Part shown: in pieces, positions 1,898 through 42,610 of the stretch
Position numbering within the stretch: the stretch's first letter is position 1
Layout: each line of letters starts with the position of its first letter
From: Pocillopora damicornis
Taxonomy: Eukaryota
Assembly (NCBI RefSeq): GCF_003704095.1
Contig: NW_020846445.1
Span: 1-64,000 of the forward strand
Direction of reading: 5' to 3'
Length of the DNA stretch: 64,000 nucleotides
Position numbers and translations under genes: made by a program
The notes under the pieces: model-generated
The model's input: the letters and a program-made list of their open reading frames with translations, nothing else
The model's database searches: none
What the model was told of the DNA's origin: nothing

Positions 1898-3228
1898 ATG
1901 GCAGCTGACGATAATTGGCAGACGGAACTTCCAACTCTCGTCGAAAGAACTGCCTTCATTTTCAACAACGAGATATTGAGCGACGTGAAGTTTGTTGTTC
2001 CTGTGTCGATTGGTGAAATTGAAAGCAAGAAGGTGATCCCAGCTCACAAGTTTGTGCTCGCAATCAGTAGTCCCGTGTTCTTTGCCATGTTCTATGGTCT
2101 AATGGCGGAGACTAAAGACTCTATTGAACTGCCTGACTGTGACTACGAGAGTCTGTTGGAGTTGTTTCGTTTCTTGTACACCGACAAAGTGAATTTAAGC
2201 GGAAACAACGTGATGCAAGTGTTGTACTTGGCGAACAAGTACATAGTACCCTCGCTCGCCAAGAAATGTACAGAATATCTTCACGACAACCTGAATGCAT
2301 CTAATGTGTTTTTCATTCTGCCGCACGCTCGGAAATTTGAAAATAAAGACTTAGAAGATCGATGCTGGAAAGTGATTAAAGAGCAGACAGAAGAAGCTGT
2401 GACGTCAGATGGATTTATTTCAGTTGAGCGATCTGTTGTTGAATCTGTTGTGAAGCGAGAGAAGTTGAGCGTAACGGAACTAAAACTGTACAAGGCAGTC
2501 GATGGCTGGGCCGCGGCAGAAGTACAAAGGCAAGGACTTACTCCTGATGGAAAGACGAAGAGACGAATTCTTGGGGAGGACATTGTTAAGGCAATACGAT
2601 TTCCACTGATATCACAGAAGGATTTTATGTCAGTTGTATTCGATTCTGATATTCTCACTTTTCATGAGGTTGGAAACATGATGAAACATTACAGCGGCGT
2701 TTTAAAATATCCTTTGTTATTTAAGGATACCGCAAGGAGCGGTATTCCGATGTATTATTCCGATTTCTAAAATTCAATCCGCCAATTGGTATGAACGGAA
2801 CTTGGTCTTACTTAGGTAGAGCCGACAGTATTGGATTTGCAATCAACCAGCCAATCTTTCTACACGGTGTTCAGCATTTTGGCTCAGACGGCGGCAAGTA
2901 TACTGTTTCTACCGAAGTTAAAGTTACAGCCCACAATTCTTGCCTCCGAAAGGAATCAGGAACATACTCTTCCATAAAGGAAGAGACTAATAATCATTAT
3001 AGCTTCGATGTAATGTTTGATCCGCCAATTCGTTTGGAGGCTCATAAAAGCTATAGGCTTGTGTCGCTTATCAAGGGTCCTCCATCATGGTATCAAGGAG
3101 AGGGAGTAAAGTCTTTTGAATCGAAAGGAGTGCTGGTCAATTTCATGAAGTCAGTGGAGAGTGCCAATGGGACTTCGGAAACGAGTGGCCAATTTCCAGC
3201 TTTCATATTTAGTACTTGTCAGGCATAA
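1898..3228 (+). pseudogene. BTB-BACK-PHR (BTBD6-like) gene, copy 1, frameshifted at the BACK/PHR junction
   Basis: ORF 1898-2770 has the BTBD1/2/3/6 signatures WQT..T..ER..FIFNNE.LSDVKF and AHKFVLAISSPVFFAMFYG, plus a BACK region. The PHR domain (RFLKFN..WSY..DSI.F..LHGVQHFG..GQFP) continues from 2761 to 3228 in another frame. Net +2 nt versus the paralogue at 7881-7910, with TATTCCGAT duplicated at 2743-2751 and 2756-2764. Confidence 0.85.
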
Positions 3229-3482
3229 ATAATTGGAAATTAGTTTTGGATTGTTTTTGCTGCTAATAGTTGATGAAGTTAAAAATTATTGAATACGTAC
3301 CGTACTTTTATTCGTTGCGACCTGGTAAGTGCTTAGAAGTGAATTAAGTGCTACGACGGAATATTGGAATGCTTTTGGAATGTTTCACCTATTACTTAAG
3401 TTGTAACATTAAACAATAATGATTTTCCGAAATAAAAATAAACCTTCGAACAGTTTGTTGTATCGTCAGCCAGAAATTAGAT

Positions 3483-3582
3483 NNNNNNNNNNNNNNNNNN
3501 NNNNNNNNNNNNNNNNNNNNNNNNNNNNNNNNNNNNNNNNNNNNNNNNNNNNNNNNNNNNNNNNNNNNNNNNNNNNNNNNNN
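3483..3582. other. Assembly gap (100 N)
   Basis: Run of exactly 100 N, typical of an unsized scaffold gap. Confidence 0.99.
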
Positions 3583-6428
3583 ACAAGCAACGTGTTAATC
3601 ATCTTTAATACTGCAGCTGTCTTGAGAGAGTCAATGAGGAAAAGGCTTTGACTGCTAACGGTTAACCCAGAAATACGCATAACGACACTTTGGAGATAGG
3701 AAAAATTTTTACGGTTAACTTATATACGACCGACACTTAAAATTTGTTTCTTTTTACCATTGATGGCTAAATTCATTGTTCATTTTACGGCTAACGGTTA
3801 ACCCTATTGAGACCCTCACATAAGCCTGACAATACTGAGTAGTGACCGAGAAGTGTAGGCTTGAACTCTGACTGTGATGTAAATAACGGGGGGGACGGGG
3901 GGCGGGGGGGTAAGGAAAACGTCACCATGAAATGACTGAAATGCGCCCAGTTTCATTGCTGCTCCCGTCCATCTTGCTCTTTATGTTTGCTAATTTTCAA
4001 CCATTGCAAACCTCTTATAATTTTTGGGTTTGCAAACTGACTAGAAGTTGACAACACATCCTTCTGTTATTAAAAAGCCTCTTCACTCCCAAGATCTCGA
4101 TGTCCTTTTTTTCTTCCCCGTTAGTGATATCTTTCTTTAAATTTCGGCTCAAAGAGTCACGTGTTAAATCAAACAGTTTTCGCTGGTGGATGTTCAATTC
4201 CTCATCACTTTTCGATCAGAAAATTTGTTGATGTTGTTAGGAGAAATTACTTGTTGGTCATTCTTAAGAGTGAAAAGGTTAAACGATCACTCTGTTTTTT
4301 TCTTTTTTTTTCTGTTTTTCAAAATTGTCTCACGAAGCACATGCAGGTTCTCTTCAGTTAATCATCAACACCAGTGGATATCCTAGTGTCAAAATTTGAA
4401 GATTTTGGGGATTTTTGGAAGATTTTCCCTTATTTGGGATCGAGCTGTGTGAGAAAGGAGTCCGCAAAAAAACAAAAAACAATAAATGACCTCCCCCTTC
4501 GCCCCCCTCCCCTCCCATTCTTCACCCCTCTCCCTAGATTGGAATATCCTTTCCTAGCCCCTTGAACCATGATAAAAGACAATCATGCACCCGTCGGGCT
4601 AATCTTTAACGGATAAATTAATGTTTGATATAATGTTGTCAAAGTGTTGACGGATAACGCTGATCAGCGATCAGGTTAGGTCAACAGCCACATTATTATT
4701 AACCAACATACAGGATATGTCTATGAACGCTTTTTGTCAGCTGATCATCTTAAGCGTGCTTCTATCGTCATCTCCCATAACAGGTAATACGCTGATGTTT
4801 TATTTCCATACTTTCGTTTGGAGGTTTTGAACAAAAATTTATATTCTAGTTTTTTTTCTGTGTAAATGATTTATTAAACATTTGTCAGTTTATGTACGTT
4901 GCGCCATTCGCTCTTTGACGAGTAAAACATGGCTCAAAGCTTGCGTAAGTAGTTGAGGTCAGTCAGTTGTAGTCACGTGTAACTGTGAATGTGATTTTCT
5001 GTATGCAGTATCGTCAGTGACAATGAGCTTATAATAAAGTTATGATTTCTACTGTTGCCCAGTGGCACTGACATTGTGCAGTATTATGGGCTGTTATAGG
5101 CTGTTAATTTGCAACAAAACGACACTCTCTTCCGATACAAATGATAATTACGTCCGTGTTTTTTGGGGGTCGTTTTCTACTCTCTATTAACATTCTCTCA
5201 ACTTTGTATTTCAGTTTAAACTTTTTTGGAGAATAAAGGATAAACCACCCGTGGTGTTACACGTCACGCAACGCTCTCTTTCCGGCCAACCGTTACGTGT
5301 TCTTTAGGCCCTCATATGAATAGCGGACTAAATTTGTTTCGGGATGTTTTCTGAATAACTTTACTACAAAATAATCAATTATTGCAATTATGAATCACTG
5401 TGCACCAAAGAAGCAAAAAGTGGGATGTGGTAGACGATTCTCATCTTGACTCTGCCACAAAACGATAGACACATTTTCCATAACATGCCTTTGTTGAAAT
5501 TAAAGGAATGAAGGAAACAGTTCTGCTAAACGATGTAGAAGGAGGGTCAAGTGATATTTCATAGTATCATCGAACGACTTTTGTCGAGACAAGAAAAAAT
5601 TATTCGGGCAAATCAACAGCCTCCCTCCCTGGTGTACTTATTTACGTGAGCGTTGACTCTCCATTACATCAAGACAAGTCATTTTACCTGTTTTGCAGCA
5701 GCCCTTTTTCGATTTTTTTCTTTGTTATGGCTACTGACCTCTTTAACAGTTATAATTTGGTAATTATTAGAGACCACTTATTAATTATATATCGCCTGTA
5801 AGGGGGGGGGAGTGAGGGGGGGGTGAGGGGGGGGTTGAAGGAGATTTTGGGGTATCACATGGTCGCCAAAAAGGGAGGACTATAGAAAATTGACTACTAA
5901 TGAGGGGAGGGTGGAGAACTTTGGTTGAGTCAAAATAAAATTAATTTGATCCCTCACCCCTCCCCCCGTAAAGCTCTGTATTATTCTGACGATACTTCTA
6001 ATTGGCAGCCAATTTTCTGTAGTCCCCTCTTTATACTCTATTGGCGACGACAGATCCCCCCTCCATTCTCCCTGAAAATCTTGTGACCCTCTAAATCCTG
6101 CAACCACTTCCCCCCCCCCACCCGAGAATACTGACTGGTCTCAAAGTAAAGCTTTTATTTACCGGGGGGATTTTCCATCTAATTTCTGGCTGACGATACA
6201 ACAAACTGTTCGAAGGTTTATTTTTATTTCAGAAAATCATGATTGTTAATGTTAAAACTTAAGTAATAAGTGAAACATTCCAAAAGCATTCCAATATTCC
6301 GTCGTAGCACTTAATTCACTTCTGAACACTTACAAGGTCGCAACGAATAAAAGTACGGTACGTATTCAATAATTTTTAACTTCATCAACTATTAGCAGCA
6401 AAACAATCCAAAAATAATTTCCAATTAT

Positions 6429-7271
6429 TTATGCCTGCCAAGTACTAAATATGAAAGCTGGAAATTGGCCACTCGTTTTCGAAGTCCCATTGGCACTCTC
6501 CACTGACTTCATGAAATTGACCAGCACTCCTCTCGATTCAAAAGACTTTACCCCCTCTCCTCCATACCATGATGGAGGACCCTTGATAAGCGACACAAGC
6601 CTATAGCTTTTATGAGCCTCCAAACGAATTGGCGGATCAAACATTACATCGAAGCTATAATAATTATTAGTCTCTTCCTTTATGGAAGAGTATGTTCCTG
6701 ATTCCTTTCGGAGGCAAGTAATATTGTGGGCTGTAACTTTAACTTCGGTAGAAACAGTATACTTGCCACCGTCTGAGCCAAAATGCTGAACACCATGTAG
6801 AAAGATTGGCTGGTTGATTGTAAATTCAATACTGTCGGCTCTATCTGAGTATGACCAAATTCCTTTTGCTGGCGAATTGAACTTTAGAAATCGATTACAT
6901 CGGAATAAAACGCTCCTTGCGGTATCCTTAAATAACAAAGGATATTTTAAAACGCCGCTGTAATGTTTCATCATGTTTCCAACCTCATGAAAAGTGAGAA
7001 TATCAGAATCGAATACAACTGACATAAAATCCTTCTGTGATATCAGTGGAAATCGTATTGCCTTAACAATGTCCTCCCCAAGAATTCGTCTCTTCGTCTT
7101 TCCATCAGGAGTAAGTCCTTGCCTTTGGACTTCTGCCATGGCCCAGCCATCGACTGCCTTGAACAATTCTAGTTCCGTTACGCTCAACTTCTCTCGCTTC
7201 ACAACAGATTCAACAAAAGATCGCTCAACTTTAAAAAATTCATCTGACGTCACAGCTTCTTCTGTCTGCTC
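6429..7271 (-). CDS. BTB-BACK-PHR gene, copy 2 (3' part; 5' end lost in gap)
   Basis: Open frame from the gap edge to the stop at 6429, near-identical to copies 1 and 3 (BACK plus complete PHR ending GQFPAFIFSTWQA). Its 3' flank, 6177-6428, is the reverse complement of 3229-3482. Confidence 0.85.
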   Translation of the reverse strand, partial: EQTEEAVTSDEFFKVERSFVESVVKREKLSVTELELFKAVDGWAMAEVQRQGLTPDGKTKRRILGEDIVKAIRFPLISQKDFMSVVFDSDILTFHEVGNMMKHYSGVLKYPLLFKDTARSVLFRCNRFLKFNSPAKGIWSYSDRADSIEFTINQPIFLHGVQHFGSDGGKYTVSTEVKVTAHNITCLRKESGTYSSIKEETNNYYSFDVMFDPPIRLEAHKSYRLVSLIKGPPSWYGGEGVKSFESRGVLVNFMKSVESANGTSKTSGQFPAFIFSTWQA

Positions 7272-7371
7272 NNNNNNNNNNNNNNNNNNNNNNNNNNNNN
7301 NNNNNNNNNNNNNNNNNNNNNNNNNNNNNNNNNNNNNNNNNNNNNNNNNNNNNNNNNNNNNNNNNNNNNNN
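7272..7371. other. Assembly gap (100 N)
   Basis: Run of exactly 100 N. Confidence 0.99.
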
Positions 7372-8357
7372 TGGCGAACAAGTACATAGTACCCTCGCTC
7401 GCCAAGAAATGTACAGAATATCTTCGCGACAACCTGAACGCATCTAATGTATTTTTTATTCTGCCGTACGCACAGAAATTTGAAAATAAAGACTTAGAAG
7501 ATCGATGCTGGAAAGTGATTAAAGAGCAGACAGAAGAAGCTGTGACGTCAGATGAATTTTTTAAAGTTGAGCGATCTGTTGTTGAATCTGTTGTGAAGCG
7601 AGAGAAGTTGAGCGTAACAGAACTAAAATTGTACAAGGCAGTCGATGGCTGGGCCACGGCAGAAGTACAAAGGCAAGGACTTACTCCTGATGGAAAGACG
7701 AAGAGACGAATTCTTGGGGAGGACATTGTTAAAGCAATACGATTTCCATTGATATCACAGAAGGATTTTATGTCAGTTGTATTTGATTCTGATATTCTCA
7801 CTATTCATGAGGTTGGAAACATGATGAAACATTATAGTGGTGTTTTAAAATCTCCTTTGTTATTTAAGGATACCGCAAGGAGCCTTTTATTCCGATGTAA
7901 TCGATTTCTAAAGTTCAATTCGCCAGCAATAAAAATTTGGTCATACTCGGGTGGAACTGACAGTATTGAATTTACAACAAACAAGCCAATCTTGCTACAT
8001 GGTGTTCAGCATTTTGGCTCAGACGGTGGCAAGTATACTGTCTCTACCGAAGTTAAAGTTACAGCCCACACTTCTTGTCTCGGAAAGAAATCAGGAACAT
8101 ACTCTTCAATAAAGGAAGAGACTAATAATTATTATAGCTTCGATGTGATGTTTGATCCGCCAATTCGTTTGGAGGCTCATGAAAGCTATAGGCTTGTGTC
8201 GCTTATCAAGGGTCCTTCATCATGGTATGGAGATGAGGGAGTAACGTCTCTTAAATTGAGAGGAGTGCAGGTCAATTTCATGAAGTCAGTGGAGAGTGCC
8301 AATCACACTTCGGAAACGAGTGGCCAATTTCCAGCTTTCATATTTAGTACTTGTTAA
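7372..8357 (+). CDS. BTB-BACK-PHR gene, copy 3 (5' end lost in gap)
   Basis: Frame is open from the gap edge (ANKYIVPSLAKKCTEYLRDNL...) through ORF 7515-8357; PHR intact, ending GQFPAFIFSTC. Confidence 0.88.
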
Positions 8358-8690
8358 GCATAGATAATAGAAAATTATTTTTTGATTGTTTTTGCTGCTA
8401 ATAATTGACGAAGTTAAAAATTATTGAATACGTACTTTTGTTCTTTGCGACCTTGTAAGTGTTCAGAAGTGAATTAAGTGTCACGACGGAACATTGGAAT
8501 GCTTTTGGAATGTTTCACTTATTACTTAAGTTGTTACGTTAAACAATAATGACATTCTGAAATGAAAATAAACCTTCGAACAGTTTGTTTGTATCGTCAG
8601 CCAGAAATTAGATGGACACTTCCCCTGGTGAATTACAGCTTTACTTTGGTACCAGTCAGTATTCCTCGGCTTTTAAGCCGACGGTTAAAA

Positions 8691-8894
8691 CCCTTTAACT
8701 CCCATGAGTGACCAAGACAGAATTTCTTCTTACAATATCTATACAATATCATGCAGACAAGTGATAAGACTAAAGAAAAATATCCATTACGGGATTACTA
8801 ATTGATCTGATATCAAATTCTCCAAACTAACATGATGAGAATCATTCTGCAGACAGTAAGGGAAATTAATAATGGGATCTTGGGAGTTAAAGGG
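8691..8894. mobile_element. ~204-bp MITE with CCCTTTAACTCCC...GGGAGTTAAAGGG terminal inverted repeats (piggyBac-like ends)
   Basis: 13-bp TIR visible at both ends; same length and family as 26548-26751. Confidence 0.8.
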
Positions 8895-9740
8895 TTGATA
8901 GGGGGTGGGGTTGTTGCAGGATTTAGAGGATCACAAGATTTTTAGGGAGAATGGAGGGGGGATCTGTCGTCTCCAATAGTTTATGAAGAGGAGACTATAG
9001 AAAATTGACTGTCAGTGAGGGGCATCCTTAGAATAATGCAGAGCCTTAGGAGGAAGGGGGGGGGGGCGGGTTGTGGAGGGATCAAATTAATTTTATTGTG
9101 ACAAAAATAAAAATTTCGAAATACCCCCCTCCCCTACCCTAGGCGATGACCGGTGCCTTTAGCGATGTGTGAGTTTTTACAGCTTATTACTGTTCAGTGC
9201 CTTTCGAGTTGATGCATTGGGGGCAAGAAATTTCTGTACCAAATCAATTTCTTTGCCTCTTCTGAAGCTTAGGATATTATTTTGAATTCGGAGGATGCGA
9301 TCGAGGTCATCTTTTATTCTCCACGAAAGGTAAACTGAAATACAAAGTTCGGAGAGTGTTAAAAGAGAGTGGAAAACAACCCCCAAAAAACACGTACGTA
9401 ATTATCATGAGTATCTGAAGAGAGTATCGTTTGGTTGCAAATTAACAGCCCATAATAATGCACAATGTCAGTGCCACTGGGCAACAGTAAAAATCATATC
9501 TTTATTAAAGGCTCATTGTTTACCTGACGATACTGCATACAGAAAATCACATTCACAGTTACACGTAAAAATCATAAGAGGTTTGCGCTGGTTGAAAATT
9601 AGCAAACATGAAGAGTTAGACGAGTCAAACTGTTTAAATTCCCATAAATCTTTGCCCAAAGTGAAACCACAGCAAACATGCCAAAATTTGCACCAACTTA
9701 ACAAAAAATCTGCGAAGAGTATCGAGAGTGGAACACAACG

Positions 9741-10800
9741 ATGGCGGCAGAAGAAAACTGGCAGTCGAAACTATCAACCATAGCCGAGAAGACCGCTTTC
9801 ATCTTCAACAAGGAGTTAGTGAGCGATGTAAAATTTGTCGTTCCAATGTCGACAGACGAAAGCGAAAGAAAACTCACAAGTTTGTGCTCGCAATCAATAG
9901 TCCTGTGTTCTTTGCCATGTTCTATGGTCAAATGGCGGAGACTAAAGACTCTATTGAACTGCCTGACTGTGAGTACGAGAGTCTGTTGGAGGTGTTTCGT
10001 TTCATGTAAAGCAACAATGTGAATTTAAGCGGAAGTAATGTAATGAAAGTGCTGTACTTGTCGAACAAATACACGGTATCGCTTGTCGAGAAATGCGAAG
10101 AATATCTTCGAGAAAACCTGAAAGCATCGAACGTGTTCTGTATTCTGCCGCACGCTCAGAGATTTGAAGATAAAGACTTAGAAGATCGATGTTGGGAAGT
10201 GATTAAAAACCAGACAGAAGAAGCTGTGACGTCAGACGAATTTATGTCAGTTGAGAGATCTGTTGTTGAATCTGTTGTAAAGAGAAGTGTTGAATGTGAC
10301 GGAAGTGGAACTGTTCAAAGCTGTTGATCGCTGGGCCAGAAAAGAATGTGAAAGGCAAGGGATGACTTCTGATGGAAGGACAAAGAGACAAATTCTCGGA
10401 GAAGATATTGTTAACGGAATACAGTTTCCTCTGATGGAAGAGAAAGATTTTGTATCTGTCGTATTGGACTCTCATCTCTTGAATATTGAAGAATTATGCA
10501 ACATGATAAAACTCTACAACAATGTTTTGAATATTCCTTTACCGCGCGTATAAGCCTGTAGAGGTATTTTACGATGTCAGAGACTTAAGATGTTTTTCTC
10601 AGGACCATACTGGGGTAACGACGGCAAAGACCCTGACTGTATCATTCTCACCGTCAACAAGCCTATCGGTTACACGGAGTTGAACATTTTGGTTCTGATG
10701 GAGGCGAGTACACAGTTAAGACAGACATTTTTGAACCCATGGACAACACTTCGCTCGTAAAACGAGCGGGAAATTATACTTCAGAAAAAAGCGATACCCA
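9741..10800 (+). pseudogene. BTB-BACK-PHR pseudogene, copy 4
   Basis: MAAEENWQ start. Frameshifting deletion before AHKF (~9868), TAA at 10007, 2-nt loss at ~10283, TAA at 10551. PHR similarity stops abruptly at ~10800 (NYTSEKSDT), where repeat-like sequence begins. Closest to copy 9. Confidence 0.9.
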
Positions 10801-11239
10801 CGTTATCCATACCGCGGATGTCCTTCGAGAAAAAATTCGTACGCGAGCTAGTCTCACTAAAATCCTAGCAAACTATATATCAGAGAAAAGTAACTTCAGT
10901 TTACGATTAAGATTTAATTTAAGCGCCTTTTCTTTTAAGGAAGACACAGGAAGTGTCAGGAGCCGGTAAGGCGTGAAACGACCGAAGGTTCTTTTATTTA
11001 ATTTATCGGGTATCGGATGCCGCAGCACGAGCAAGATAGCTGCACAGTCTCATTCACAAGGCATTAATCAACAAAAGTGTGTCAGGCTTTTTTTGATATT
11101 CTGATTTGTTGTCTAGATATCGGCATCTTAAGTTGGAGGGTAAGCTGGAAAACCAGGAATCCGGAATTCCGGCGGAATTCCGCCGTAATTTCGCCGGAAT
11201 TTTTCAACGTCCGTTTTTTTTAAATTCAAAATGACTCCG

Positions 11240-13673: not shown

Positions 13674-15056
13674 ATGCCTATGGAAGAAATCTGGCAGACG
13701 AAACTTCCAACTCTTGTTGATAGAACCACTTCTATTTTCAACAGTGAGTTACTGAGCGATGTAAAATTTGTCGTTCCGGTGTCGACTGCGGAAAGTGAAA
13801 GTAAGAAAGTGATCCCAGCTCACAAGTTTGTTCTTGCCATCAGTAGTCCTGTGTTCTTTGCCATGTTCTATGGTCAAATGGCGGAGACTAAAGACTCTGT
13901 TGACCTGCCTGACTGTGAGTACGAGAGTCTGTTGGAGTTGTTTCGTTTCTTGTACAGCGACAAAGTGAATTTAAGCGGAAGTAATGTGATGCAAGTGTTG
14001 TACTTGGCGAATAAATACATGGTGCCTTCACTCTTGGACAAGTGCACAGAATACCTTTGCAACAACTTGACAACATCCAACGTATTTTGTATCCTGACAC
14101 ATGCTCAGAAATTTGGCGGTAAATCTTTAGAAGATCGATGCTGGGAGGTGATTGAGCGGCGAACCGAAGAGGCTGTGACTTCAGACGAATTTGTTACAGT
14201 TGAGCGATCTGTTGTTGAATCTGTTGTCAAGAGAGAAGTATTAAATGTGAAAGAGGTGGAACTGTTCAAAGCTGTTGATCGCTGGGCTACAAAGGTGTGT
14301 GAAAAGGAAATTCCAATAGCCCCCAGTGATGGAGAAGAAAAGAGACGAATTCTTGGAGATGAGATCGTTAAAGCAATACGGTTTCCACTGATGTCGGAAG
14401 AGGTGTTTATGTCTGAGGTGCTTAATTCTCACATCCTTGCTCTTAATGAGGTTGAAGATATGATAAAGCATTACAGAGGGGTTCTTCAGTCACCTTTGCC
14501 GTTTAAGAAAGGCGCGAGGGGTAAAATTGACTACATCCGTTGTAACCGATTTCAAAAGTTTAATGCTCCGTGCAGTGGAAGCGATGGTTGGTTAGGTGCC
14601 GGGTATTACAGTGTTACAGTCCCAAGCTCCGGTGGTTCTTGGTCTTACAATGGTGCAGCGGCTGACAGTGTCAATTTTACAGTCAACAAGCCAATCATGT
14701 TACACGGAGTTCAACACTTCGGTTCTGTAGGTGGCAACTACACGGTTTCCACTGAAGTTAAAGATACCACCCACAACTCTTGTCTTGGAAAAGAATCAGG
14801 AACTTACACCTCAGAAAAGGAAGACAGGAAGAATTATTATGGCTTTGATGTATTGTTTGATCGTCCAGTTTCGCTGGAAGCAAACAAACAGTACACCTTA
14901 ATGTCTGTTATCGAGGGTCCTTTGTCATGGTATGGAGCGGAAGGACAAATGTCCGCTGAGTCAGGAGGGGTGCAATTCAGTTTCAGTGATTCAGACGATG
15001 ATTCTAACAGCACCTCGGTTACAAACGGCCAGTTTCCAGTCATTATTTTCAATTAA
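13674..15056 (+). CDS. BTB-BACK-PHR (BTBD6-like) protein, copy 5, intact, 460 aa, intronless
   Basis: Single ORF with all three domains; PHR motifs RCNRF, LHGVQHFGS, FDVLFD.P, GQFP. Confidence 0.95.
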   Translation: MPMEEIWQTKLPTLVDRTTSIFNSELLSDVKFVVPVSTAESESKKVIPAHKFVLAISSPVFFAMFYGQMAETKDSVDLPDCEYESLLELFRFLYSDKVNLSGSNVMQVLYLANKYMVPSLLDKCTEYLCNNLTTSNVFCILTHAQKFGGKSLEDRCWEVIERRTEEAVTSDEFVTVERSVVESVVKREVLNVKEVELFKAVDRWATKVCEKEIPIAPSDGEEKRRILGDEIVKAIRFPLMSEEVFMSEVLNSHILALNEVEDMIKHYRGVLQSPLPFKKGARGKIDYIRCNRFQKFNAPCSGSDGWLGAGYYSVTVPSSGGSWSYNGAAADSVNFTVNKPIMLHGVQHFGSVGGNYTVSTEVKDTTHNSCLGKESGTYTSEKEDRKNYYGFDVLFDRPVSLEANKQYTLMSVIEGPLSWYGAEGQMSAESGGVQFSFSDSDDDSNSTSVTNGQFPVIIFN

Positions 15057-15859: not shown

Positions 15860-17127
15860 AGAAGAAACTGGTATCGTCTTTACGGTAAGCCGAACCTCGT
15901 TTATTTTCAACCACAATGTACTGAGCGATATGAAGTTTGTTGTTGCAATGTCGAATAACGGAAGCGAAACTGCCTAACTGTGAGTACGAGAGTCTGTTGG
16001 AGTTTTTTCGTTACATTTACAGCGACACTGTCGTTGGAGTGAAATTAAGTGGAAGCAATATATGATGCAAGTTCATTACTTGGCGAAAAAATTGATACCT
16101 TTGCTGGCTGAGAAATGCTCTGAATACCTGAAATGGATCCTGACATCATCCGGCGCATTCTTAATTCTTCACTACGGACAGAAATTTGAAGATTAACGTT
16201 TGGAAGGTCGATGTTGGGAAATAATTGGATTATACACTGAAGAACTCATGTCAGATGATTTTGTTACTGTGGAGCGATCTGATATCGAGTGTCTTGTAAA
16301 CAGGAGAGTGTTGGTTATCACAGAGGTAGAATTGTTCTGTTCGCTGGGCCACAAAAGAATGCGAAAGGCAAAGTATATCTTCTGATGGAGAAGCGAAAAG
16401 ACGAAATTGTAAAACCAATACGGTTACCATTGATGTCGCAAAAGGAGTTTACCTCTACTGTGTTAAATTCTATATTTTCGACTGATGAAGAGTTTGGCAT
16501 CGTTATGAAATACTACAGCGATTAATTCACGTCTCCTCTATCATTCCGAGACATTCCAAGACGTAAGAAGAAACACCCAACCGCTCACACGTTCCTGGTT
16601 GTAAGAAGAAATCTCTAAAGGGCAACTGCGTGGACTTCCATAGGTGTACTGAGGAGTTCTTAGCGGAAACCCGCTTTCTCGCTGCAAAAGATTTAACTAT
16701 TCCAGTCTTCTAAATATCTTTAGGGGTTATTCTGGCTTCAATTCTCAGTCGACAAACCCATCACGTTACTTGTAGTTCAGCACTTTGGCTCGGAAGGTGT
16801 GAAGAGAACATAGTATCTACAGAAGTTATTGATACAACAAACAACGCATCGGTTGCACATCAATCTAGAACATACCCTTCAGGGATGGACGACATTGCGA
16901 ATTATTACGGTTTTCATGTATCGTTTTATTGTCCTGTTTATTTGGAGACACATAAACAGTACAAGGTGCAGTCGATTGTCGACGATCCTATCTCATGGAG
17001 CGGAAAACAAGGACAGACATTTGTGGAATCCGAAGGGGTGCGATTCACTTTCAGTGATGCAGAAGATGGTACAGCTGATGACACTTCCGTAGTGCACGGC
17101 TTATTTCCAGCTTTTCTCTTGTCTTAA
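15860..17127 (+). pseudogene. Heavily decayed BTB-BACK-PHR pseudogene, copy 6
   Basis: Collinear fragments (EENW, FIFN..LSDMKFVV, LPNCEYESLLEFFR, LEGRCWE, IRLPLMSQKEF, QHFGSEG, YYGFHVSF, GVRFTF, GLFPAFL) in shifting frames with stops and deletions. Confidence 0.88.
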
Positions 17128-18103: not shown

Positions 18104-19411
18104 ATGGAAGTAGGCTGGCAGACGAAGCTACAAGGTCTCGTAGAAAGAACCGCGTTTATTTTCAACAACGAGTTACTCAGCGATGTAAAATTTGTCGTCC
18201 CATTTTCGCCTAGTGAAATTGAATTACGTACGAAGGTAATCCCAGCTCACAAGTTTGTGCTCGCAGTCAGTAGTCCCGTGTTCTTTGCCATGTTCTATGG
18301 TCAAATGGCGGAGACTAAAGACTCTATTGAACTGCCTGACTGTGATTATGAGAGTCTGTTGGAGTTGTTCCGTTTCTTGTACAGCGACAAAGTGAATTTA
18401 AGGGAAAGAAATGTGATGCAAGTGTTGTATCTGGCAAACAAATACATGGTGCCTTCACTCGCCGAGAAATGTTCAGAATATCTCCGAGACAATTTGACAG
18501 CATCAAACGCGTTCAGTATTCTGACGCTCGCTCATAAATTTGAAGATAAAAATTTGGAGTATCGATGCTGGAAAGTTATTGAGAAGCAGACGGAAAAAAC
18601 TGTGAGAGGAGACGAATTTGTTACAGTTGATCGATCTGTAGTTGAATCTGTTGTGAAGAAAGAAGTGTTGAATGTGACAGAAGTGGAACTGTTCAAAGCT
18701 GTTGATCACTGGGCTACGAAAGAATGTGAAAGGCAAGGATTAACTGTTAATGGAGAGAGCAAAAGAAGAATCCTTGGAGAGGAGATAATTCGAGCAATAC
18801 GGTTTCCGTTGATGTCACTGAAGGAGTTTGAGTCAGTTGCGCTCGACTCTAATATTCTAACCATTGATGAGGTACGCGACATAATGAACCATTTTAAGGG
18901 CGCTTTAAAATTACCTTTGCCATTTATGGACAGCGCCAGGATCCATTTCCGTTGTAACCGATTTCCAAAATTCAATGTACCGGCCGGAAGTGGCTGGTAC
19001 CACAGTGGAGCGTACAGTGTAAATTTTACCATCAACAAGCCTTTAAAGCTTCTTGGAGTGGAACAGTTTGGCTCAGAAGATGGCGAGTATACCGTGTCTA
19101 CTGAAGTTAAAGATACAGCCCACAACTCTTGTCTTGGAAAAGTATCAGGAACGTACACGTCAGTAAAGGACGATACGGACATCTACTTTGGCTTCGATGT
19201 AATGTTCAATCGTCCAGTTTGTTTGGAGGGAAATAAACAGTACACGTTGGTGTCAGTTGTAAAGGGTCCTGTGTCATGGTACGGAGAAGAAGGACAATTG
19301 TCCGTTGAATCCGGAGGGGTGCAGTTCACCTTCAGTAAATGTACATTCAAGAATGATAACGGTCACAGCTCAGTGACTTCAGGCCAGTTTCCCGCTTTCA
19401 TTTACAGCTAA
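18104..19411 (+). CDS. BTB-BACK-PHR protein, copy 7, intact, 435 aa, intronless
   Basis: Single ORF with BTB, BACK and PHR motifs, ending GQFPAFIYS. Confidence 0.95.
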   Translation: MEVGWQTKLQGLVERTAFIFNNELLSDVKFVVPFSPSEIELRTKVIPAHKFVLAVSSPVFFAMFYGQMAETKDSIELPDCDYESLLELFRFLYSDKVNLRERNVMQVLYLANKYMVPSLAEKCSEYLRDNLTASNAFSILTLAHKFEDKNLEYRCWKVIEKQTEKTVRGDEFVTVDRSVVESVVKKEVLNVTEVELFKAVDHWATKECERQGLTVNGESKRRILGEEIIRAIRFPLMSLKEFESVALDSNILTIDEVRDIMNHFKGALKLPLPFMDSARIHFRCNRFPKFNVPAGSGWYHSGAYSVNFTINKPLKLLGVEQFGSEDGEYTVSTEVKDTAHNSCLGKVSGTYTSVKDDTDIYFGFDVMFNRPVCLEGNKQYTLVSVVKGPVSWYGEEGQLSVESGGVQFTFSKCTFKNDNGHSSVTSGQFPAFIYS

Positions 19412-20337: not shown

Positions 20338-21678
20338 ATGGCTGTTGCGGAAGAAAACTGGCAGACGGCATTATCAACTATCACTCGGAGAACTACGTTT
20401 ATTTTCAACAACGAGTTATTAAGCGATGTGAGGTTTGTTGTTCCAGTTTCGACTGAACAAGGCGGAATTAATATGGCGATCCCGGCTCACAAGTTTGTGC
20501 TCGCCATCAGTAGTCCTGTATTCTTCGCCATGTTCTATGGTCAAATGGCGGAGACTAAATACTCTATTGAACTGCCTGACTGTGAGTACGAGAGTCTGTT
20601 GGAATTGTTTCGTTTCATGTACAGCGACGAAGTGAATTTAAGCGGAAATAATGTGATGCAAGTGTTATACTTGGCGAATAAATACATGGTGCCCTCACTA
20701 ACTGAGAAATGTGCCAAATATCTTCGAGAAAATTTGACAGCATCCAATGTGCTATGTATTCTGCCGCAAGCTCAGAAATTTGAAGATAAAGATTTGGAAG
20801 ATCGCTGCTGGAAAGTGATTGATAAACAGACTGAAGAAGCTGTGACTTCAGATGAATTTGTAACAGTTGAGCGATCTCTACTTGAATCTGTTGTAAAGAG
20901 AGAACTACTCAATGTGAAAGAAGTGAAATTATTCAAGGCTGTTGATCGATGGGCCACCAAGGGATGTGAACGAGAAGGGATCCTCCCTGATGGACTGGCG
21001 AAGAGACGAATTCTAGGCGAAGAGATCGTGAAAGCAATACGGTTTTCCCTGATGTCGCAGGAGGAGTTCGCTACAGTTGTGGCTGATTCTCACATCCTCA
21101 ACATGCTAGAGGTTGAAGAACTGATGAAACAATTCCGTGAGGATACATCAGTATCATCTGAGTCATTCTTGAATGTTTCAAGAGCGCGTTGCCTTAAGTA
21201 TGTCCATCGATGTAGTAGATTTACAACGATTGTACCTCAATCTTATGACTCCGGGTGGGGATATACACGCGGTATGTCTGATAGCCTTTCGTTCTTTGTT
21301 AGTAATCACATAAATTTACATGGAGTTCAGCATTTTGGGACTGAAGGAGGAAAATACACAGTTTCTACTGAAGTCAAGGATGCCACAGATGACTTATCGC
21401 TCGCAAATCAGTTTGGATTTTACTCAGCAGCGATGAATAACACTAATCAATTCTATGGATTTGACGTATTGTTTGACATACCAGTTTGTTTAGAGCCAAA
21501 CAAGGTGTACAAGGTAAAATCGTTTGTCACTGGCCCAAATTCGTGTTACGGGGACAAAGGGAAAATCTTTGTTGATTGCGAAGGAGTAAGATTCGAGTTC
21601 TGTGAGGGGGGTGATAATAACGGAACGTCTGTGAAACGGGGTCAGTTTCCTTCTTTGATTTTTACTAAGATAAGATGA
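20338..21678 (+). CDS. BTB-BACK-PHR protein, copy 8, intact, 446 aa, intronless
   Basis: Single ORF with the three domains; AATAAA at 21807 and 21860. Confidence 0.95.
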   Translation: MAVAEENWQTALSTITRRTTFIFNNELLSDVRFVVPVSTEQGGINMAIPAHKFVLAISSPVFFAMFYGQMAETKYSIELPDCEYESLLELFRFMYSDEVNLSGNNVMQVLYLANKYMVPSLTEKCAKYLRENLTASNVLCILPQAQKFEDKDLEDRCWKVIDKQTEEAVTSDEFVTVERSLLESVVKRELLNVKEVKLFKAVDRWATKGCEREGILPDGLAKRRILGEEIVKAIRFSLMSQEEFATVVADSHILNMLEVEELMKQFREDTSVSSESFLNVSRARCLKYVHRCSRFTTIVPQSYDSGWGYTRGMSDSLSFFVSNHINLHGVQHFGTEGGKYTVSTEVKDATDDLSLANQFGFYSAAMNNTNQFYGFDVLFDIPVCLEPNKVYKVKSFVTGPNSCYGDKGKIFVDCEGVRFEFCEGGDNNGTSVKRGQFPSLIFTKIR

Positions 21679-36080: not shown

Positions 36081-36135
36081 ACGAAGATGTCGGTATATCC
36101 AGTGTGTGATTTCTTCGGATCCAAATACCGTAATT

Positions 36136-39100: not shown

Positions 39101-40721
39101 CTAATTTAGGTACTAATTTGTTATTACCTTTGAAGGTATTCAGTACCTGTTGAACCAAGTCATGGTCTGCTTGCGGCGACCATACCAGACGATGCCGAGG
39201 AACGACTAAAGGCTCATCTGACACCACTTGACAGCTGGTCCCTAACCGGTAAGTATGTCGGCGAAGTGACCAAGGATGTCTGCGAAGAGACTGGTATGTC
39301 GGCGAGTTGACCAAAGGCGACCGTCGACGAGTTGACCAAAGGTGTTGCGAGAAAAGTAATTGTGTCGGCGAGGTGACCAAAGGTGTCGCGAGAAAACTAA
39401 TTGTGTCAGCGAGGTGACCAAAGGTGTTGCGAGAAAACTAATTGTGTCGGCGAGGTGACCAAAGGTGTCGCGAGAAAACTAATTGTGTCGGCGAGGTGAC
39501 CAAAGGTGTCGCGAGAAAACTAATTGTGTTGGCGAGGTGACCAAAGGTGTCGCGAATGGATTAATTGTGTTGACGAGCTGGTGGTCGGCGAAGTGACCCG
39601 GTACCCCGACAACAGTCCTTTTCAGGACTACTCGCACCTGAACGATCAAATTTCATGGTCCAATAAAATCACATGTAACTGTTAAACTCGTGGTCATCCA
39701 GACATCTTCAGGGGTCGATTAATAGTTTTCATACTCACTTAAAGTTTTTGCATCATTTTGAGAAATCAGTGTCAAATGTAGCGGGAAATCTCTAGCGCAC
39801 GATGTTGAATATTATTTCTAAAACTTGTTCTCTTTATTCGACAGGCCTCGAATTTGCTGTGGAAACATTGAAGTCGTTTATTCTTACAATGGCACTCATC
39901 GAAAATCACCTCACAGTGGAAAAAGCTGTTCATTTGTCCAGACTAGAGCTAGAATTTCAGGTCTGTTGTTTCACCATTATTCGTCATTGATTGCTGGAAT
40001 GGACTACTCACTCGTGTTACTTAAATCAATCGTATTTACTCATTAAACTACAAGAAAGTAGTGTACATTTGGTGGGAACAATTAGTTATGCTTTAGACTA
40101 TAATAAGGTGCAGGGTAGTGAAATGTGAAGGAATGCACTGTTTGGTAATGTGTCTCAAAAGAAACAACTTACTACAATTCTATAATATTCTGATGAAAGG
40201 GCGCTGCATTTAAACAGGAGCGCTGGGGCAAACGGTAATCCATGATTTTTGCAGCTACATTTTTCTCCTTCAAATTTGACTCATGGTAGGGAAGACAAGC
40301 GGGGGCGGAGGAGGGGACGAAGGATTGGGAATGCGAACGTTTCTTCCCCAAAAAATCCTTATGTTTCGCCTGTCATGCGAGGCAAACATATTTACTTATT
40401 TCTTAATCTCATTGTGCGCCCTTGCGCCCTTAGTTTCTTCAAACCGAGCTTCTGGCGCAAGCGGAGAAAAAATCCTTGTAAAAGTGTAGGAAAGCATCAC
40501 CCTTGCCCTCGATTTTGTTTTTCTTTGGTATGGTTTTGGAATTGAAGTGTGCACTCGGTTATTACAAACTGTGTTTTTCTTCTTTACTGCAGATAAGCCG
40601 GTGGGGTAGTGTGGAATGGGCGCACGATCTGGAGTTGATGGAGACCAGGAGTAGGGTGGCTGCCGCTGTTTTGTTTTACAGTCTAAATAACAGACGTAGA
40701 ACTTTACCATCAAGTTCATAA
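36136..40721 (+). CDS. ATPAF2: ATP synthase mitochondrial F1 complex assembly factor 2 (ATP12 family), 8 exons, 288 aa
   Basis: Exons 36136-36274, 36791-36835, 37298-37443, 38102-38199, 38614-38694, 39136-39248, 39845-39960, 40593-40721; GT-AG and in phase (867 nt). Transit-peptide-like N-terminus; motifs RKRFY, D.KKVKTP.G, LAMAVSVEW, MHLTSL.NTVIDNP, LSRLELEFQISRWGSVEWAHD. Confidence 0.97.
39255..39606. repeat. 41-bp minisatellite (~5.5 copies) plus shorter GTCGGCGA..TGACC cores in ATPAF2 intron 6
   Basis: Unit GTCGGCGAGGTGACCAAAGGTGTCGCGAGAAAACTAATTGT starts at 39364, 39405, 39446, 39487 and 39528. Confidence 0.93.
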
Positions 40722-41321
40722 TCATCTCTCTTTCTAGAGCATCAACATATTTTGCTCCTCTTGATGTGTGTCGACAGTGCTTAAGACTCCTTTGTAGGAT
40801 CCGGACCGCGTCAGGATAACTTTCTAACCGAAAAAAATGGTATTTTTACGGCCGGAAAATGTACTAGAAATTGAAAGAGCTTGTTAGTTTTGTTACTTGT
40901 TAGTTAGAGTATCCATGGTTAATGTAATCCATATTTAATAGTTTGAAACCTTACTGTTGAGTTTTTTTCTTTGAAATTCCTTTTGAGCCTTACAGCTAAC
41001 TGATTTCTATTTTTTTCCTTAAAATTTTCAGATCGACCTTTTACATTTACGAGCAAGCAAAAAAAAATCATACAAAATATTTAATCGCACATAGTATGTC
41101 TAACTGACTCATTAAAATCCCATCTAACAAATGTTCTGAGTCAACTTTGATAGGTCACACTTTGCTTTTTCACGTGTAGTTTTCATCCGTCACTGTTTGT
41201 TATAGGATTCAGATGTGTATACCTGGTCATCCTTGAAGATTGATCCAACATTAATTTACCTAAGAGAGATAGGCTGGGCTTTACGTCAACGGGAACGGAT
41301 CGGGTAACGTTATCAGAATTT

Positions 41322-42610
41322 TTACCTGGGAACTGAAAACAAAATTTCAGGAAACTGTCCTCTTTCTATATCGGTTCCATTAGAGTTTTCTGCCGAACAA
41401 CGAAATGTAAATCGCACTCCCTGGCACTTCACTGATGTTTGCCCTTGATGATAGACTTTATCTTATACTCTTTATTTGCCTTCAAAATAATTGGACGATC
41501 GAACAACACATCAAAGCCGTAATAAGTACTAGTATAGCTTTTCTTTGAGACATAATTTCCTCCTCGACTCACAAGCAAATTGTTGTCAAGGGGATCAATA
41601 ATGTCTGTCTTAACTGTATACTCTTCGCGTTCGGAGCCAAAATGTTGAACTCCGTGTAAAATAATAGGTTTGTTGACGGTGAGAAGGATACAGTCAGGGC
41701 CGTTGTAATTATAAATCCAGCCTGAGAGAAACGTCTTAAACCTCTGACATCGTTGCTTAGAGAAAATACCTCTACAGGCTTGTACGAACTGTAAAGGATT
41801 ATTCAAAAAATTGTTGTAGTGTTTTATCAAGTTGCAGAATTCTTCATGATTCAAGAGATGAGAGTCAAATACGACAGATGCAAAATCTTTCTCTTCCATC
41901 AACGGAAACCGTATTCCGTTAACAATATCTTCTCCAAGAATTTGTCTCTTTGTCCTTCCATCGGAGGTCATCCCTTGCCTTTCACATTCTTTTATGGCCC
42001 AACGATCAACAGCTTTGAACAGTTCCACTTCCCTCACATTCAACACTTCTCTCTTTACAACAGATTCAACAACAGACCGATCAACTGCAACAAATTCGTC
42101 TGACGTCACAGCTTCTTCTGTCTGCTCTTCAATCACTTTCCAGCATCGATCTTTCAAATCTTTATCTTCAAATATCTGTGCGTGCGGCAGAATTAAAAAC
42201 ACATTCGATGCTTTCAGGTTGTCTCGAAGATATTCTGTACATTTCTTAGCGAGTGAGGGTACTATGTACTTGTTCGCTAAGTACAACACTTGCATCACGT
42301 TATTTCCGCTTAAATTTACTTTGTCGCTGTACAAGAAACGAAATAACTCCAACAGACTCTCGTACTCACAGTCAGGCAGTTCAATAGGGTCTTTAGTCTC
42401 CGCCATACGACCATAGAACATGGCGAAGAACACAGGACTATTAATGGCGAGCACAAACTTGTGAGCTGGGATCGCCTTCTTACTTTCACCTCCGCCATTC
42501 GGGAGTGAAACAACAAATTTTACATCGCTGAGTAACTCGTTGTTAAATATAAACGCGGTTTTCTCTACCGTAGTTGATAGTTTCGTCTGCCAGTTCTCTT
42601 CAGCCGCCAT
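41322..42610 (-). pseudogene. BTB-BACK-PHR gene, copy 9, with a late frameshift truncating the PHR domain
   Basis: ATG at 42610; ORF stops at 41429 (IKGKHQ*). The missing tail TSVKCQGVRFTFRCSAENSNGTDIERGQFPEILFSVPR* lies in another frame down to 41322, and the P.SWYG.E segment seen in paralogues is absent. Confidence 0.87.

What the first reader, a model, noticed from the sequence alone, without database searches (positions are those of the whole stretch)
1898..42610. Nine-copy intronless BTB-BACK-PHR array that looks like a diversifying CUL3 substrate-adaptor repertoire
Seen: nine single-exon paralogues (3 intact, 2 gap-truncated, 4 disrupted at different stages of decay) with conserved BTB and very divergent PHR domains. 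Established: BTBD1/2/3/6 are CUL3 adaptors, encoded by few intron-containing genes in vertebrates, with PHR as the partner-binding end; large fast-evolving adaptor families (nematode F-box and MATH-BTB) are proposed to target foreign proteins. Inference: this is a lineage-specific intracellular recognition-and-degradation system (pathogen or symbiont proteins), seeded by an intronless copy and evolving by birth-and-death.
Basis: partly seen in the sequence, partly recalled or inferred. Interest (0 to 1): 0.8.

Follow-up and report, generated by a model that had tools for sequence, protein, structure and literature searches.

The report
Coral BTBD6-like ubiquitin-adaptor gene cluster
This stretch of a stony-coral genome holds a real cluster of nine single-exon BTB-BACK-PHR genes and gene wrecks from a large coral family of likely CUL3 ubiquitin-ligase adaptors, but its intact old members are conserved rather than racing, so the proposed immune role is unproven.

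Summary
Nine BTB-BACK-PHR copies lie at 1898-21678 and 41334-42610: three intact (c5, c7, c8), two cut by the gap at 7272-7371 (c2, c3) and four disrupted (c1, c4, c6, c9). All are single-exon. BTB is conserved and PHR divergent.

The cluster is not special to this window. The 234-Mb pocilloporid genome has at least 22 more intact single-exon copies on other contigs, and public coral data hold thousands of relatives. c5 and c8 have Stylophora orthologues (81% and 84%) that appear to share one scaffold. The c5-c6-c7-c8 order recurs in Pocillopora metagenome scaffolds.

Between orthologues the intact copies are under purifying selection: c7 and c8 have dN/dS of 0.1-0.2, and the PHR core is about 0.1. 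Only c5's BACK-PHR junction loop runs fast (1.5-1.9, not significant). In the young clade that holds c1-c3, BTB is constrained (0.17) while PHR drifts near neutrality (0.77).

RNA-library contigs from four studies cover c5, c6 and c7 collinearly, without splice joints.

Birth-and-death of putative CUL3 adaptors is supported. Positive selection and an immune or symbiont role are not shown. Similar BTBD6 arrays are published for vent snails. This scan's first-stage notes had flagged parts of this same stretch.

The parts
1898..3213 (+). c1: BTB-BACK-PHR copy, disrupted. The ORF stops at 2770 after a 2-nt loss near 2741 and a 4-nt gain near 2757. It belongs to the young c1-c3 clade.
3483..3582 (.). 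Assembly gap 270 nt downstream of c1, not inside a copy. Continuity across it is not shown.
6429..7271 (-). c2: 3' part of a copy (equivalent to c5 residues 163-460 plus a short tail). It is open throughout and its 5' end is lost in the gap.
7272..7371 (.). Assembly gap between c2 and c3, which lie head to head. The two sides are on opposite strands, so they do not form one frame.
7372..8357 (+). c3: 3' part of a copy (equivalent to c5 residues 112-460). It is open throughout and its 5' end is lost in the gap. It forms an inverted duplication with c2, with arms of at least 2.3 kb.
9741..10834 (+). c4: decayed copy with several frame changes and stops, cut short near residue 397. Its closest relative in the window is c9 (83% DNA identity).
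13674..15056 (+). c5: intact gene, 460 aa. It has a Stylophora orthologue at 81% and is covered by RNA-library contigs.
13878..13886 (+). Met-Ala-Glu in the BTB domain of c5. It aligns with the hydrophobic-x-Glu CUL3-contact motif of BTBD6 and SPOP, and every copy here that covers the site keeps hydrophobic-x-Glu or -Asp.
   Evidence: the motif's role is from my own knowledge of published CUL3-BTB structures
14574..14633 (+). c5-private 20-residue insertion loop at the start of PHR (aa 301-320). It is absent from 80-88% of relatives and is modelled with pLDDT below 50. It sits inside the family's main hypervariable stretch, aa 281-330.
15864..17124 (+). c6: old, heavily decayed copy with many stops, yet covered by long collinear contigs in RNA libraries.
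18104..19411 (+). c7: intact gene, 435 aa. It is intact in other Pocillopora samples, and no relative above 70% was found outside the genus. It is covered by RNA-library contigs.
20338..21678 (+). c8: intact gene, 446 aa. It has a Stylophora orthologue at 84% and shows strong purifying selection.
41334..42610 (-). c9: outlying copy 20 kb from the main cluster on the opposite strand. An ORF of 393 aa from the ATG is followed by a frame change near residue 415, so the last third of PHR is out of frame.

Best explanation
The window holds a tandem cluster, with one inverted pair and one outlier, of a large single-exon BTBD3/6-like gene family of stony corals.

Each intact gene encodes three parts. 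The first is a BTB dimerisation domain with the CUL3-contact motif. The second is a helical BACK domain. The third is a C-terminal PHR beta-sandwich. The most likely function is as a substrate adaptor of CUL3-RING ubiquitin ligases, with BTB-BACK docking on CUL3 and the variable PHR end choosing the partner.

The cluster grows by local duplication and shrinks by frameshifts. It is a mix of ages:
- c5 and c8 predate the Pocillopora-Stylophora split and are kept by purifying selection.
- c7 is also under purifying selection, but it has no close relative outside Pocillopora, so its age is open.
- c1-c3 belong to a young, highly polymorphic Pocillopora clade in which BTB is constrained and PHR changes at a nearly neutral rate.
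- c4, c6 and c9 are wrecks.

Shown here: gene structure, domain content, copy map, family size, synteny, selection pattern and transcription of c5, c6 and c7. Inferred: CUL3 binding, PHR as the substrate-binding end, and any biological target.
For: Copy map and domains:
- Nine copies, each with BTB, BACK and PHR.
- The closest solved structures are human BTBD6 BTB (2vkp, E 5e-26), BTBD2 PHR (3no8) and MYCBP2 PHR.
- An AlphaFold model (mean pLDDT 81) matches BTBD2 PHR at target TM 0.86. It also matches the BTB-BACK parts of KLHL11 and KBTBD2, solved in CUL3 complexes, at lower scores (TM 0.26-0.44).
- Hydrophobic-x-Glu or -Asp is kept in every copy of this genome that covers the site.

Single exon:
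- Full-length ATG-to-stop frames of 433-504 aa at 25 loci.
- RNA-library contigs are collinear, with no splice joints.
- A BTBD1/2-like gene on contig C3883 has a GT-AG intron in BACK at a point where the array copies are continuous.

Family size:
- 33 PHR and 58 BACK-PHR matches in the genome.
- 2693 protein clusters at E <= 1e-100.
- 25 'BTBD6-like' clusters in the ESM Atlas, commonest in Cnidaria.

Age and synteny:
- Stylophora orthologues at 81% (c5) and 84% (c8). Both are listed with the same longest-contig length, 269,813 nt.
- The c5-c6-c7-c8 order recurs in Tara Pacific scaffold L036.

Selection:
- Orthologue dN/dS is 0.21-0.23 for c7, 0.10-0.20 for c8 and 0.47-0.73 for c5. The PHR core has 9 nonsynonymous against 25 synonymous changes.
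- In the young clade, BTB is 0.17 (p 2e-8), BACK 0.47 and PHR 0.77, the last not distinguishable from 1.
- Within the c1/c2/c3 trio, coding identity equals 3'-flank identity.
Against: - No biochemical evidence exists for CUL3 binding or for any substrate.
- A preprint reports that vertebrate Btbd6 recruits its known substrate Plzf through BTB heterodimerisation, not through PHR (bioRxiv 10.1101/575910). PHR diversity therefore need not equal substrate diversity.
- The RNA data are assembled contigs from RNA libraries, which cannot give levels or strand and can contain DNA. The main support for real transcripts is the empty intergenic stretch 17480-17877 in three of four runs.
- Transcription of c8, c9 and c1-c3 was not tested.
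- c1-c3 may be partly assembly or haplotype duplicates.
- Single-indel disruptions in c1 and c9 could be assembly errors.
Confidence: 0.72

Rival explanations
1. The array is a diversifying intracellular recognition-and-degradation repertoire aimed at foreign (pathogen or symbiont) proteins, with PHR under positive selection.
For: - PHR and the BACK-PHR junction are the variable parts at every time scale.
- In the young Pocillopora clade, PHR dN/dS is 0.77 against 0.17 for BTB while the ORFs stay intact. At least 12 protein clusters below 90% identity exist in that clade.
- The same two PHR loops are multi-state hot spots in both the young clade and the whole family.
- c5's junction region gives dN/dS 1.5-1.9 plus an indel.
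- A BTBD6 expansion is listed among 'immune' families in a symbiotic vent snail (PMC7895826).
Against: - No test gives dN/dS significantly above 1.
- The hot-spot loops also have raised silent divergence, 0.17 against 0.08. This points to recombination or a mutational cause as much as to selection.
- The PHR cores of c5, c7 and c8 are strongly conserved between orthologues, and c5 and c8 are conserved across genera.
- No expression or interaction data tie the family to infection or symbiosis.
- No paper on the coral family was found.
- The other snail paper reads its BTBD6 expansion as neural, not immune (PMC7736800).
Confidence: 0.15
2. Neutral turnover. The conserved old copies (c5, c8 and probably c7) are ordinary host-directed adaptors. 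The young copies are redundant duplicates on their way to decay. The apparent PHR 'diversification' is relaxed constraint plus gene conversion, and the count of nine is inflated by assembly or haplotype duplicates.
For: - In the c1/c2/c3 trio, coding identity equals flank identity.
- c1 is already frameshifted, and four of the nine copies are wrecks.
- PHR dN/dS is not distinguishable from 1 in the young clade.
- Silent divergence is mosaic. For example, one pair has BTB dS 0.21 but PHR dS 0.02, and BTB-BACK silent divergence is 0.43-0.47 against 0.79 for PHR among the old paralogues.
- c1, c2 and c3 all end at contig breaks and overlap one another in a dovetail pattern.
Against: - BTB stays under strong constraint (0.17, p 2e-8) in the same young genes.
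- All five young-clade genes fetched from other samples are intact and full length. Plain pseudogenes would not show either feature.
- c2 and c3 are open over all the sequence that is available.
Confidence: 0.3
3. The proteins work with CUL3 but choose partners mainly through BTB heterodimerisation with other BTB proteins, as reported for Btbd6 and Plzf. PHR would then serve localisation or another role.
For: The preprint bioRxiv 10.1101/575910 reports BTB-BTB recruitment of Plzf and a role of BTB and PHR in nuclear localisation. The BTB domain here is about 55% identical to human BTBD6 BTB, counted from the alignment printed.
Against: - BTB is nearly uniform across the paralogues (family entropy 0.5 bit), so it could not give the copies different partners.
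- The divergence that distinguishes the copies sits in PHR.
- The claim rests on a single preprint about one vertebrate substrate.
Confidence: 0.12

Closest known systems
Vertebrate BTBD3/BTBD6 (and BTBD1/BTBD2): BTB-BACK-PHR CUL3 adaptors
   Same: - Same three-domain order.
- The BTB domain is about 55% identical to human BTBD6 (2vkp).
- The PHR fold matches BTBD2 PHR (3no8) at target TM 0.86.
- The hydrophobic-x-Glu motif is kept.
   Different: - The coral genes are single-exon and number dozens per genome, often in arrays. From my own knowledge, vertebrates have four genes, all with introns.
- The array copies score lower against the Pfam PHR model (about 80-110 bits) than the coral's own BTBD1/2-like gene, which has an intron (182 bits).
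- c5 carries a private 20-residue loop at the start of PHR.
Tandem BTBD6 expansions in deep-sea vent snails (Chrysomallon squamiferum 56 copies, Gigantopelta aegis 35 copies; PMC7736800, PMC7895826)
   Same: A lineage-level expansion of BTBD6-like genes arranged in tandem clusters. One of the two papers lists it among immune families in a symbiotic host.
   Different: It is in a different phylum and is presumably an independent expansion. Intron status, the selection pattern and homology of the expanded subclade to the coral family were not examined here. The snail papers offer only speculation on function, one neural and one immune.
Expanded, fast-evolving CUL3/SCF adaptor families (nematode MATH-BTB and F-box genes)
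   Same: A conserved ligase-docking domain is joined to a variable partner-binding domain. The genes lie in arrays with many pseudogenes.
   Different: Published work on those families reports site-specific positive selection in the substrate-binding domain (my own knowledge, not checked here). No significant positive selection was found in this family, and the old members are conserved across genera. The variable domain is PHR, not MATH or FTH.
MYCBP2/PAM/Highwire PHR domains
   Same: The same PHR beta-sandwich fold (3gbw, 3hwj).
   Different: Those PHR domains sit in a giant RING ligase without BTB-BACK. The probable orthologue lies elsewhere in this genome: contig C2336 has two PHR matches 6 kb apart.

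Membership tests
BTB-BACK-PHR proteins (BTBD1/2/3/6 group) | BTB, BACK and PHR domains in that order in one polypeptide | tested here: met
   Pfam finds all three above the gathering scores in c5, c7 and c8. The broken or cut copies show partial sets in the same order.
BTB-BACK-PHR proteins (BTBD1/2/3/6 group) | The C-terminal domain adopts the PHR beta-sandwich fold | tested here: met
   The AlphaFold model (PHR blocks at pLDDT 82-95 outside the loop) matches 3no8 at TM 0.86 and 3gbw at 0.83.
BTB-BACK-PHR proteins (BTBD1/2/3/6 group) | Orthology to a particular vertebrate member (BTBD3/6 versus BTBD1/2) | tested here: inconclusive
   The array copies carry the F-Y-G-x-hydrophobic-A-E form seen in human BTBD6. 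The gene with an intron on C3883 carries a different form, which I recall from BTBD1/2. No tree with vertebrate full-length proteins was built.
CUL3-RING ligase substrate adaptors | BTB domain with the hydrophobic-x-Glu CUL3-contact motif, plus a following helical 3-box/BACK | tested here: met
   The motif column reads M/L/I-x-E, or D in two copies, in every copy of this genome that covers it. BACK is found by Pfam. The fold matches the BTB-BACK parts of KLHL11 and KBTBD2 solved with CUL3, at modest TM. The motif's role is from my own knowledge of published structures.
CUL3-RING ligase substrate adaptors | Physical binding to CUL3 and ubiquitylation of a bound substrate | not testable with these tools
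   Needs co-immunoprecipitation and ubiquitylation assays.
Diversifying (arms-race) recognition families | dN/dS above 1 at sites of the recognition domain | tested here: not met
   Domain-level counts only:
- PHR 0.77 in the young clade (not significantly different from 1).
- Hot-spot loops 0.90.
- c5 junction 1.5-1.9 (not significant).
- PHR core of c5, c7 and c8 about 0.1.
Codon site models could not be run.
Diversifying (arms-race) recognition families | Lack of stable 1:1 orthologues between related species | tested here: inconclusive
   c5 and c8 have Stylophora orthologues at 81% and 84%. c7 has none above 70% outside Pocillopora. The c1-c3 clade is many-to-many within Pocillopora.
Processed retrogene-derived family | Loss of the parental introns, plus poly(A) remnants or target-site duplications | tested here: inconclusive
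   The intron present in BACK of the C3883 gene is absent from all array copies. Similarity between old copies ends within about 30 nt of the coding sequence. Poly(A) tracts and target-site duplications were not searched for and would be eroded at this age.

The most novel reading that the evidence does not exclude
Stony corals keep a large, population-variable set of single-exon CUL3 adaptors. In it, two PHR loops act as specificity-determining hypervariable regions: the loop at the start of the domain and one near the C-terminus. Recombination between copies shuffles constant BTB-BACK halves with variable PHR halves. The young Pocillopora clade containing c1-c3 would be the actively diversifying arm of an intracellular system that recognises foreign (symbiont, bacterial or viral) proteins.
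Probability: 0.15. Interest if true: 0.75.

Novelty: new member of a known kind. Interest (0 to 1): 0.42.

Why it matters
Corals lack adaptive immunity and must both tolerate intracellular algae and resist pathogens, so large variable families of intracellular recognition proteins are of interest. This family is big, mostly single-exon, transcribed and highly polymorphic in wild Pocillopora. I found no paper describing it in corals.

The data here tell future work where to look:
- The young c1-c3 clade and the two PHR loops are the places where diversifying selection could be hiding.
- c5 and c8, and probably c7, behave like ordinary conserved genes.

If the family proves to be only a redundant adaptor expansion, it is still a clean example of birth-and-death evolution. 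It would also show domain-specific constraint, and module shuffling by recombination.

Tried and rejected
- **Transposon or viral carriage of the copies: rejected.** Similarity between old paralogues is confined to the coding sequence plus at most about 30 nt. There are no shared termini.\n- **Recent within-genome concerted evolution as the cause of BTB conservation: not supported.** c5's BTB is as close or closer to non-orthologous proteins from other assemblies (0.88-0.92; one of the three is from Oculina) than to paralogues of its own genome (0.80-0.85). A site-by-site look at c5 against L032 found no donor-like tract from the window paralogues.

Full report
**What is there**

A six-frame ORF list and Pfam scan show long open frames with BTB, BACK and PHR domains. 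tblastn with the intact copy at 13674-15056 maps nine copies.

| Copy | Coordinates | Strand | State |
|---|---|---|---|
| c1 | 1898-3213 | + | disrupted |
| c2 | 6429-7271 | - | cut by gap |
| c3 | 7372-8357 | + | cut by gap |
| c4 | 9741-10834 | + | decayed |
| c5 | 13674-15056 | + | intact, 460 aa |
| c6 | 15864-17124 | + | heavily decayed |
| c7 | 18104-19411 | + | intact, 435 aa |
| c8 | 20338-21678 | + | intact, 446 aa |
| c9 | 41334-42610 | - | frame change near residue 415 |

- c1 is broken by a 2-nt loss near 2741 and a 4-nt gain near 2757.
- c4 and c6 have several frame changes and stops.
- c9 has an ORF of 393 aa from the ATG, then the frame change.

**The gaps**

The only runs of N are 3483-3582 and 7272-7371.

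- The first lies 270 nt past the end of c1. It is not inside a copy, and nothing to its right continues the flank that c1 shares with c2 and c3.
- The second separates c2 (minus strand) from c3 (plus strand), head to head, each lacking its 5' part. The two sides therefore cannot be one frame. If both genes are whole, the gap hides at least about 820 nt of coding sequence.

c2 and c3, with their downstream flanks, form an inverted duplication with arms of at least 2.3 kb at 80-92% identity. c1, c2 and c3 are 91-95% identical and all stop at contig ends in a dovetail pattern. One or two of them could be unmerged haplotypes, so the true count is 7-9.

**Whose genome, and how big is the family**

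The genome has 234.35 Mb in 4393 contigs. The closest named proteins come from Stylophora pistillata, Pocillopora meandrina, Oculina patagonica and Porites evermanni. Near-identical scaffolds come from Tara Pacific coral metagenomes. It is therefore a pocilloporid stony coral. From my own knowledge, the size and contig number fit the published Pocillopora damicornis assembly.

- The PHR model hits 33 places in the genome, and a BACK-PHR query hits 58.
- Extracting frames gives at least 22 further intact, single-frame, ATG-to-stop genes of 433-504 aa on other contigs, plus fragments and small arrays.
- Public protein data hold 2693 clusters at E <= 1e-100 to c8.
- The ESM Atlas has 25 'BTBD6-like' clusters, commonest in Cnidaria.

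The window's cluster is the largest found in this genome, but it is one part of a coral-wide family.

**Single exon**

The intact copies run from an ATG at the homologous position to a stop without interruption. Contigs from four RNA-seq studies (poly(A), oligo-dT, random-primed and cDNA libraries) lie collinearly on three stretches. These are c5 with its 3' end (13700-15540), c6 (15905-17470) and c7 (18026-19400). None has a splice joint. The intergenic stretch 17480-17877 is empty in three of the four runs.

A separate gene on contig C3883 has the strongest PHR match in the genome (182 bits). It has a GT-AG intron of about 620 nt inside BACK, at a point where the array copies are continuous. 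A conservative dispersed single-exon copy (L001) scores almost as high against human BTBD6 BTB as that gene does (113 against 116 bits, and 95 for c5). The intron-free state may therefore be old in this branch of the family rather than a recent retrocopy.

**Protein anatomy**

- The closest solved structures by sequence are human BTBD6 BTB, BTBD2 PHR and MYCBP2 PHR.
- An AlphaFold model built from a 55-sequence alignment has mean pLDDT 81. It shows an alpha/beta BTB, a helical BACK, a coil linker (268-287) and a beta-sandwich PHR (288-460). A c5-private loop at 303-320 has pLDDT below 50.
- Foldseek puts the PHR domains of BTBD2 and MYCBP2 first (target TM 0.83-0.86). BTB-BACK adaptors solved with CUL3 follow at lower scores.
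- The hydrophobic-x-Glu motif aligns with the CUL3-contact motif of other BTB adaptors (its role is from my own knowledge). Every copy of this genome that covers it keeps hydrophobic-x-Glu or -Asp.

**Conserved BTB, divergent PHR**

| Measure | BTB | BACK | linker | PHR |
|---|---|---|---|---|
| Median amino-acid identity, window copies and two close relatives | 0.80 | 0.69 | 0.47 | 0.54 |
| Column entropy over 50 relatives (bits) | 0.50 | 0.67 | 1.58 | 1.40 |

The hot spots are at c5 residues 281-330 and 441-450.

Pairwise dN/dS among these old paralogues is below 1 everywhere: BTB 0.18, BACK 0.26, linker about 0.28 and PHR about 0.30, with PHR silent sites saturated. At fourfold sites of codons whose amino acid is unchanged, silent divergence is 0.43 (BTB), 0.47 (BACK) and 0.79 (linker plus PHR). 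Part of the contrast is thus not selection on the protein. Old gene conversion or a mosaic history of the 5' half is likely.

Recent within-genome homogenisation is not supported. c5's BTB is as close or closer to non-orthologous proteins from other assemblies than to its neighbours, and no donor tract was seen.

**Orthologues and selection on the intact copies**

- c5 has a Stylophora relative at 81% and c8 one at 84%. Both are listed with the same longest-contig length (269,813 nt), so they probably share one scaffold. c5 and c8 are only 60% identical to each other. The duplication that separated them therefore predates the split of the two genera.
- c7 has no relative above 70% outside Pocillopora. 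It is intact and syntenic in Tara scaffolds L036 and L037.

| Gene | dN/dS against Pocillopora orthologues |
|---|---|
| c7 | 0.21-0.23 |
| c8 | 0.10-0.20 |
| c5 | 0.47-0.73 |

These orthologous scaffolds are 92-98% identical to the window in DNA. The last ~115 residues of PHR carry 9 nonsynonymous against 25 synonymous changes, pooled over seven comparisons that are not independent. That is a dN/dS of about 0.1. Only c5's linker and PHR start (residues 248-345) run fast, at 19/3 and 32/6 changes (dN/dS 1.9 and 1.5). One orthologue has a 15-codon deletion there. These ratios are not significantly above 1.

**The young clade**

c1, c2 and c3 fall in a tight clade of at least 12 protein clusters (81-97% identical). 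All of these proteins are intact and 430-442 aa long. All but one of those whose contigs were fetched come from Tara Pacific samples. I fetched the DNA of five of them. Silent divergence is unsaturated, at 0.02-0.25.

| Domain | Tree-based dN/dS | p against neutrality |
|---|---|---|
| BTB | 0.17 | 2e-8 |
| BACK | 0.47 | 0.007 |
| linker | 0.38 | 0.1 |
| PHR | 0.77 | 0.26 |
| PHR hot-spot loops | 0.90 | 0.63 |
| PHR, remainder | 0.72 | 0.34 |

Individual pairs reach 1.5-1.6 in PHR.

- 65 of 157 PHR sites vary and 19 have three or more states. These concentrate in the same two loops that vary family-wide.
- The loops also have raised silent divergence, 0.17 against 0.08.
- Silent divergence is mosaic between halves. 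One pair has BTB dS 0.21 but PHR dS 0.02. Recombination or gene conversion therefore shuffles the BTB-BACK and PHR halves.
- Within the window trio, coding identity equals 3'-flank identity.

This pattern fits two readings. One is relaxed constraint on PHR in redundant young copies. The other is a mix of positive and purifying selection. The data here cannot separate them.

**Literature**

- Btbd6 is a CUL3 adaptor for Plzf. A preprint reports that this recruitment goes through BTB heterodimerisation rather than PHR (bioRxiv 10.1101/575910). That is a caveat for treating PHR as the substrate end.
- Tandem BTBD6 expansions are published for two vent snails: 56 and 35 copies, with 17 on one chromosome (PMC7736800). 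One paper reads them as neural and another lists them as immune (PMC7895826).
- I found no paper describing the coral family.
- First-stage notes of this scan on the same stretch had flagged the hypervariable PHR loop and a possible BTB homogenisation. I tested both, with the results given above.

**Verdict**

Its members are best read as CUL3 adaptors of a coral-wide, single-exon, BTBD3/6-like family that evolves by birth and death.

The claim of a diversifying anti-foreign repertoire is not supported for the intact copies c5, c7 and c8. These three are conserved, and c5 and c8 are old. It remains an open possibility only for the young c1-c3 clade. I class the finding as a new member of a known kind, of moderate interest.

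Noticed in passing
window 15864-17470: The heavily decayed copy c6 is covered by long collinear contigs in poly(A) and oligo-dT RNA libraries (1566 and 1153 nt). It is 96.2% identical to a Tara scaffold. The neighbouring spacer is 93.75% identical and c5 coding about 92%. It is a transcribed and rather well-kept pseudogene, possibly a non-coding RNA.
   Followed up: partly
L038-L042 (relatives of c1-c3 from other Pocillopora samples): Silent divergence is mosaic between gene halves. For example, BTB dS is 0.21 but PHR dS is 0.02 in one pair. This indicates recombination or gene conversion that shuffles BTB-BACK and PHR modules among copies or alleles.
   Followed up: partly
G000 contig C3883:2080199-2082136 (L018): A BTB-BACK-PHR gene with an intron. 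Its PHR match is the best in the genome (182 bits), and a GT-AG intron of about 620 nt sits in BACK. Its BTB motif is of the BTBD1/2 type.
   Followed up: partly
window 28440-29060, 43927-44376, 48340-48720, 62808-63134: Other genes lie between and beyond the copies: a Fringe-like glycosyltransferase ORF, two ORFs with PAN-domain matches (one below Pfam's cut-off) and a weak reverse-transcriptase fragment.
   Followed up: no
window 13498 and L032:1-2970: Synteny between the window and the Tara scaffolds L032 and L034 starts abruptly at 13498, about 175 nt upstream of c5. The 3 kb upstream in L032 has no match in the window. This is a structural difference between lineages at the edge of c5.
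   Followed up: no
G000 contigs C1684, C2509, C3167, C469: There are smaller arrays of the same family elsewhere: two intact copies 5 kb apart on C1684, one intact and one partial copy on C3167, two intact copies about 4 kb apart on C469, and one intact copy plus several fragments on C2509.
   Followed up: partly
L041:9252-11115: A retroelement (RT and RNase H domains) lies 3.4 kb downstream of a young-clade copy in a Tara scaffold.
   Followed up: no
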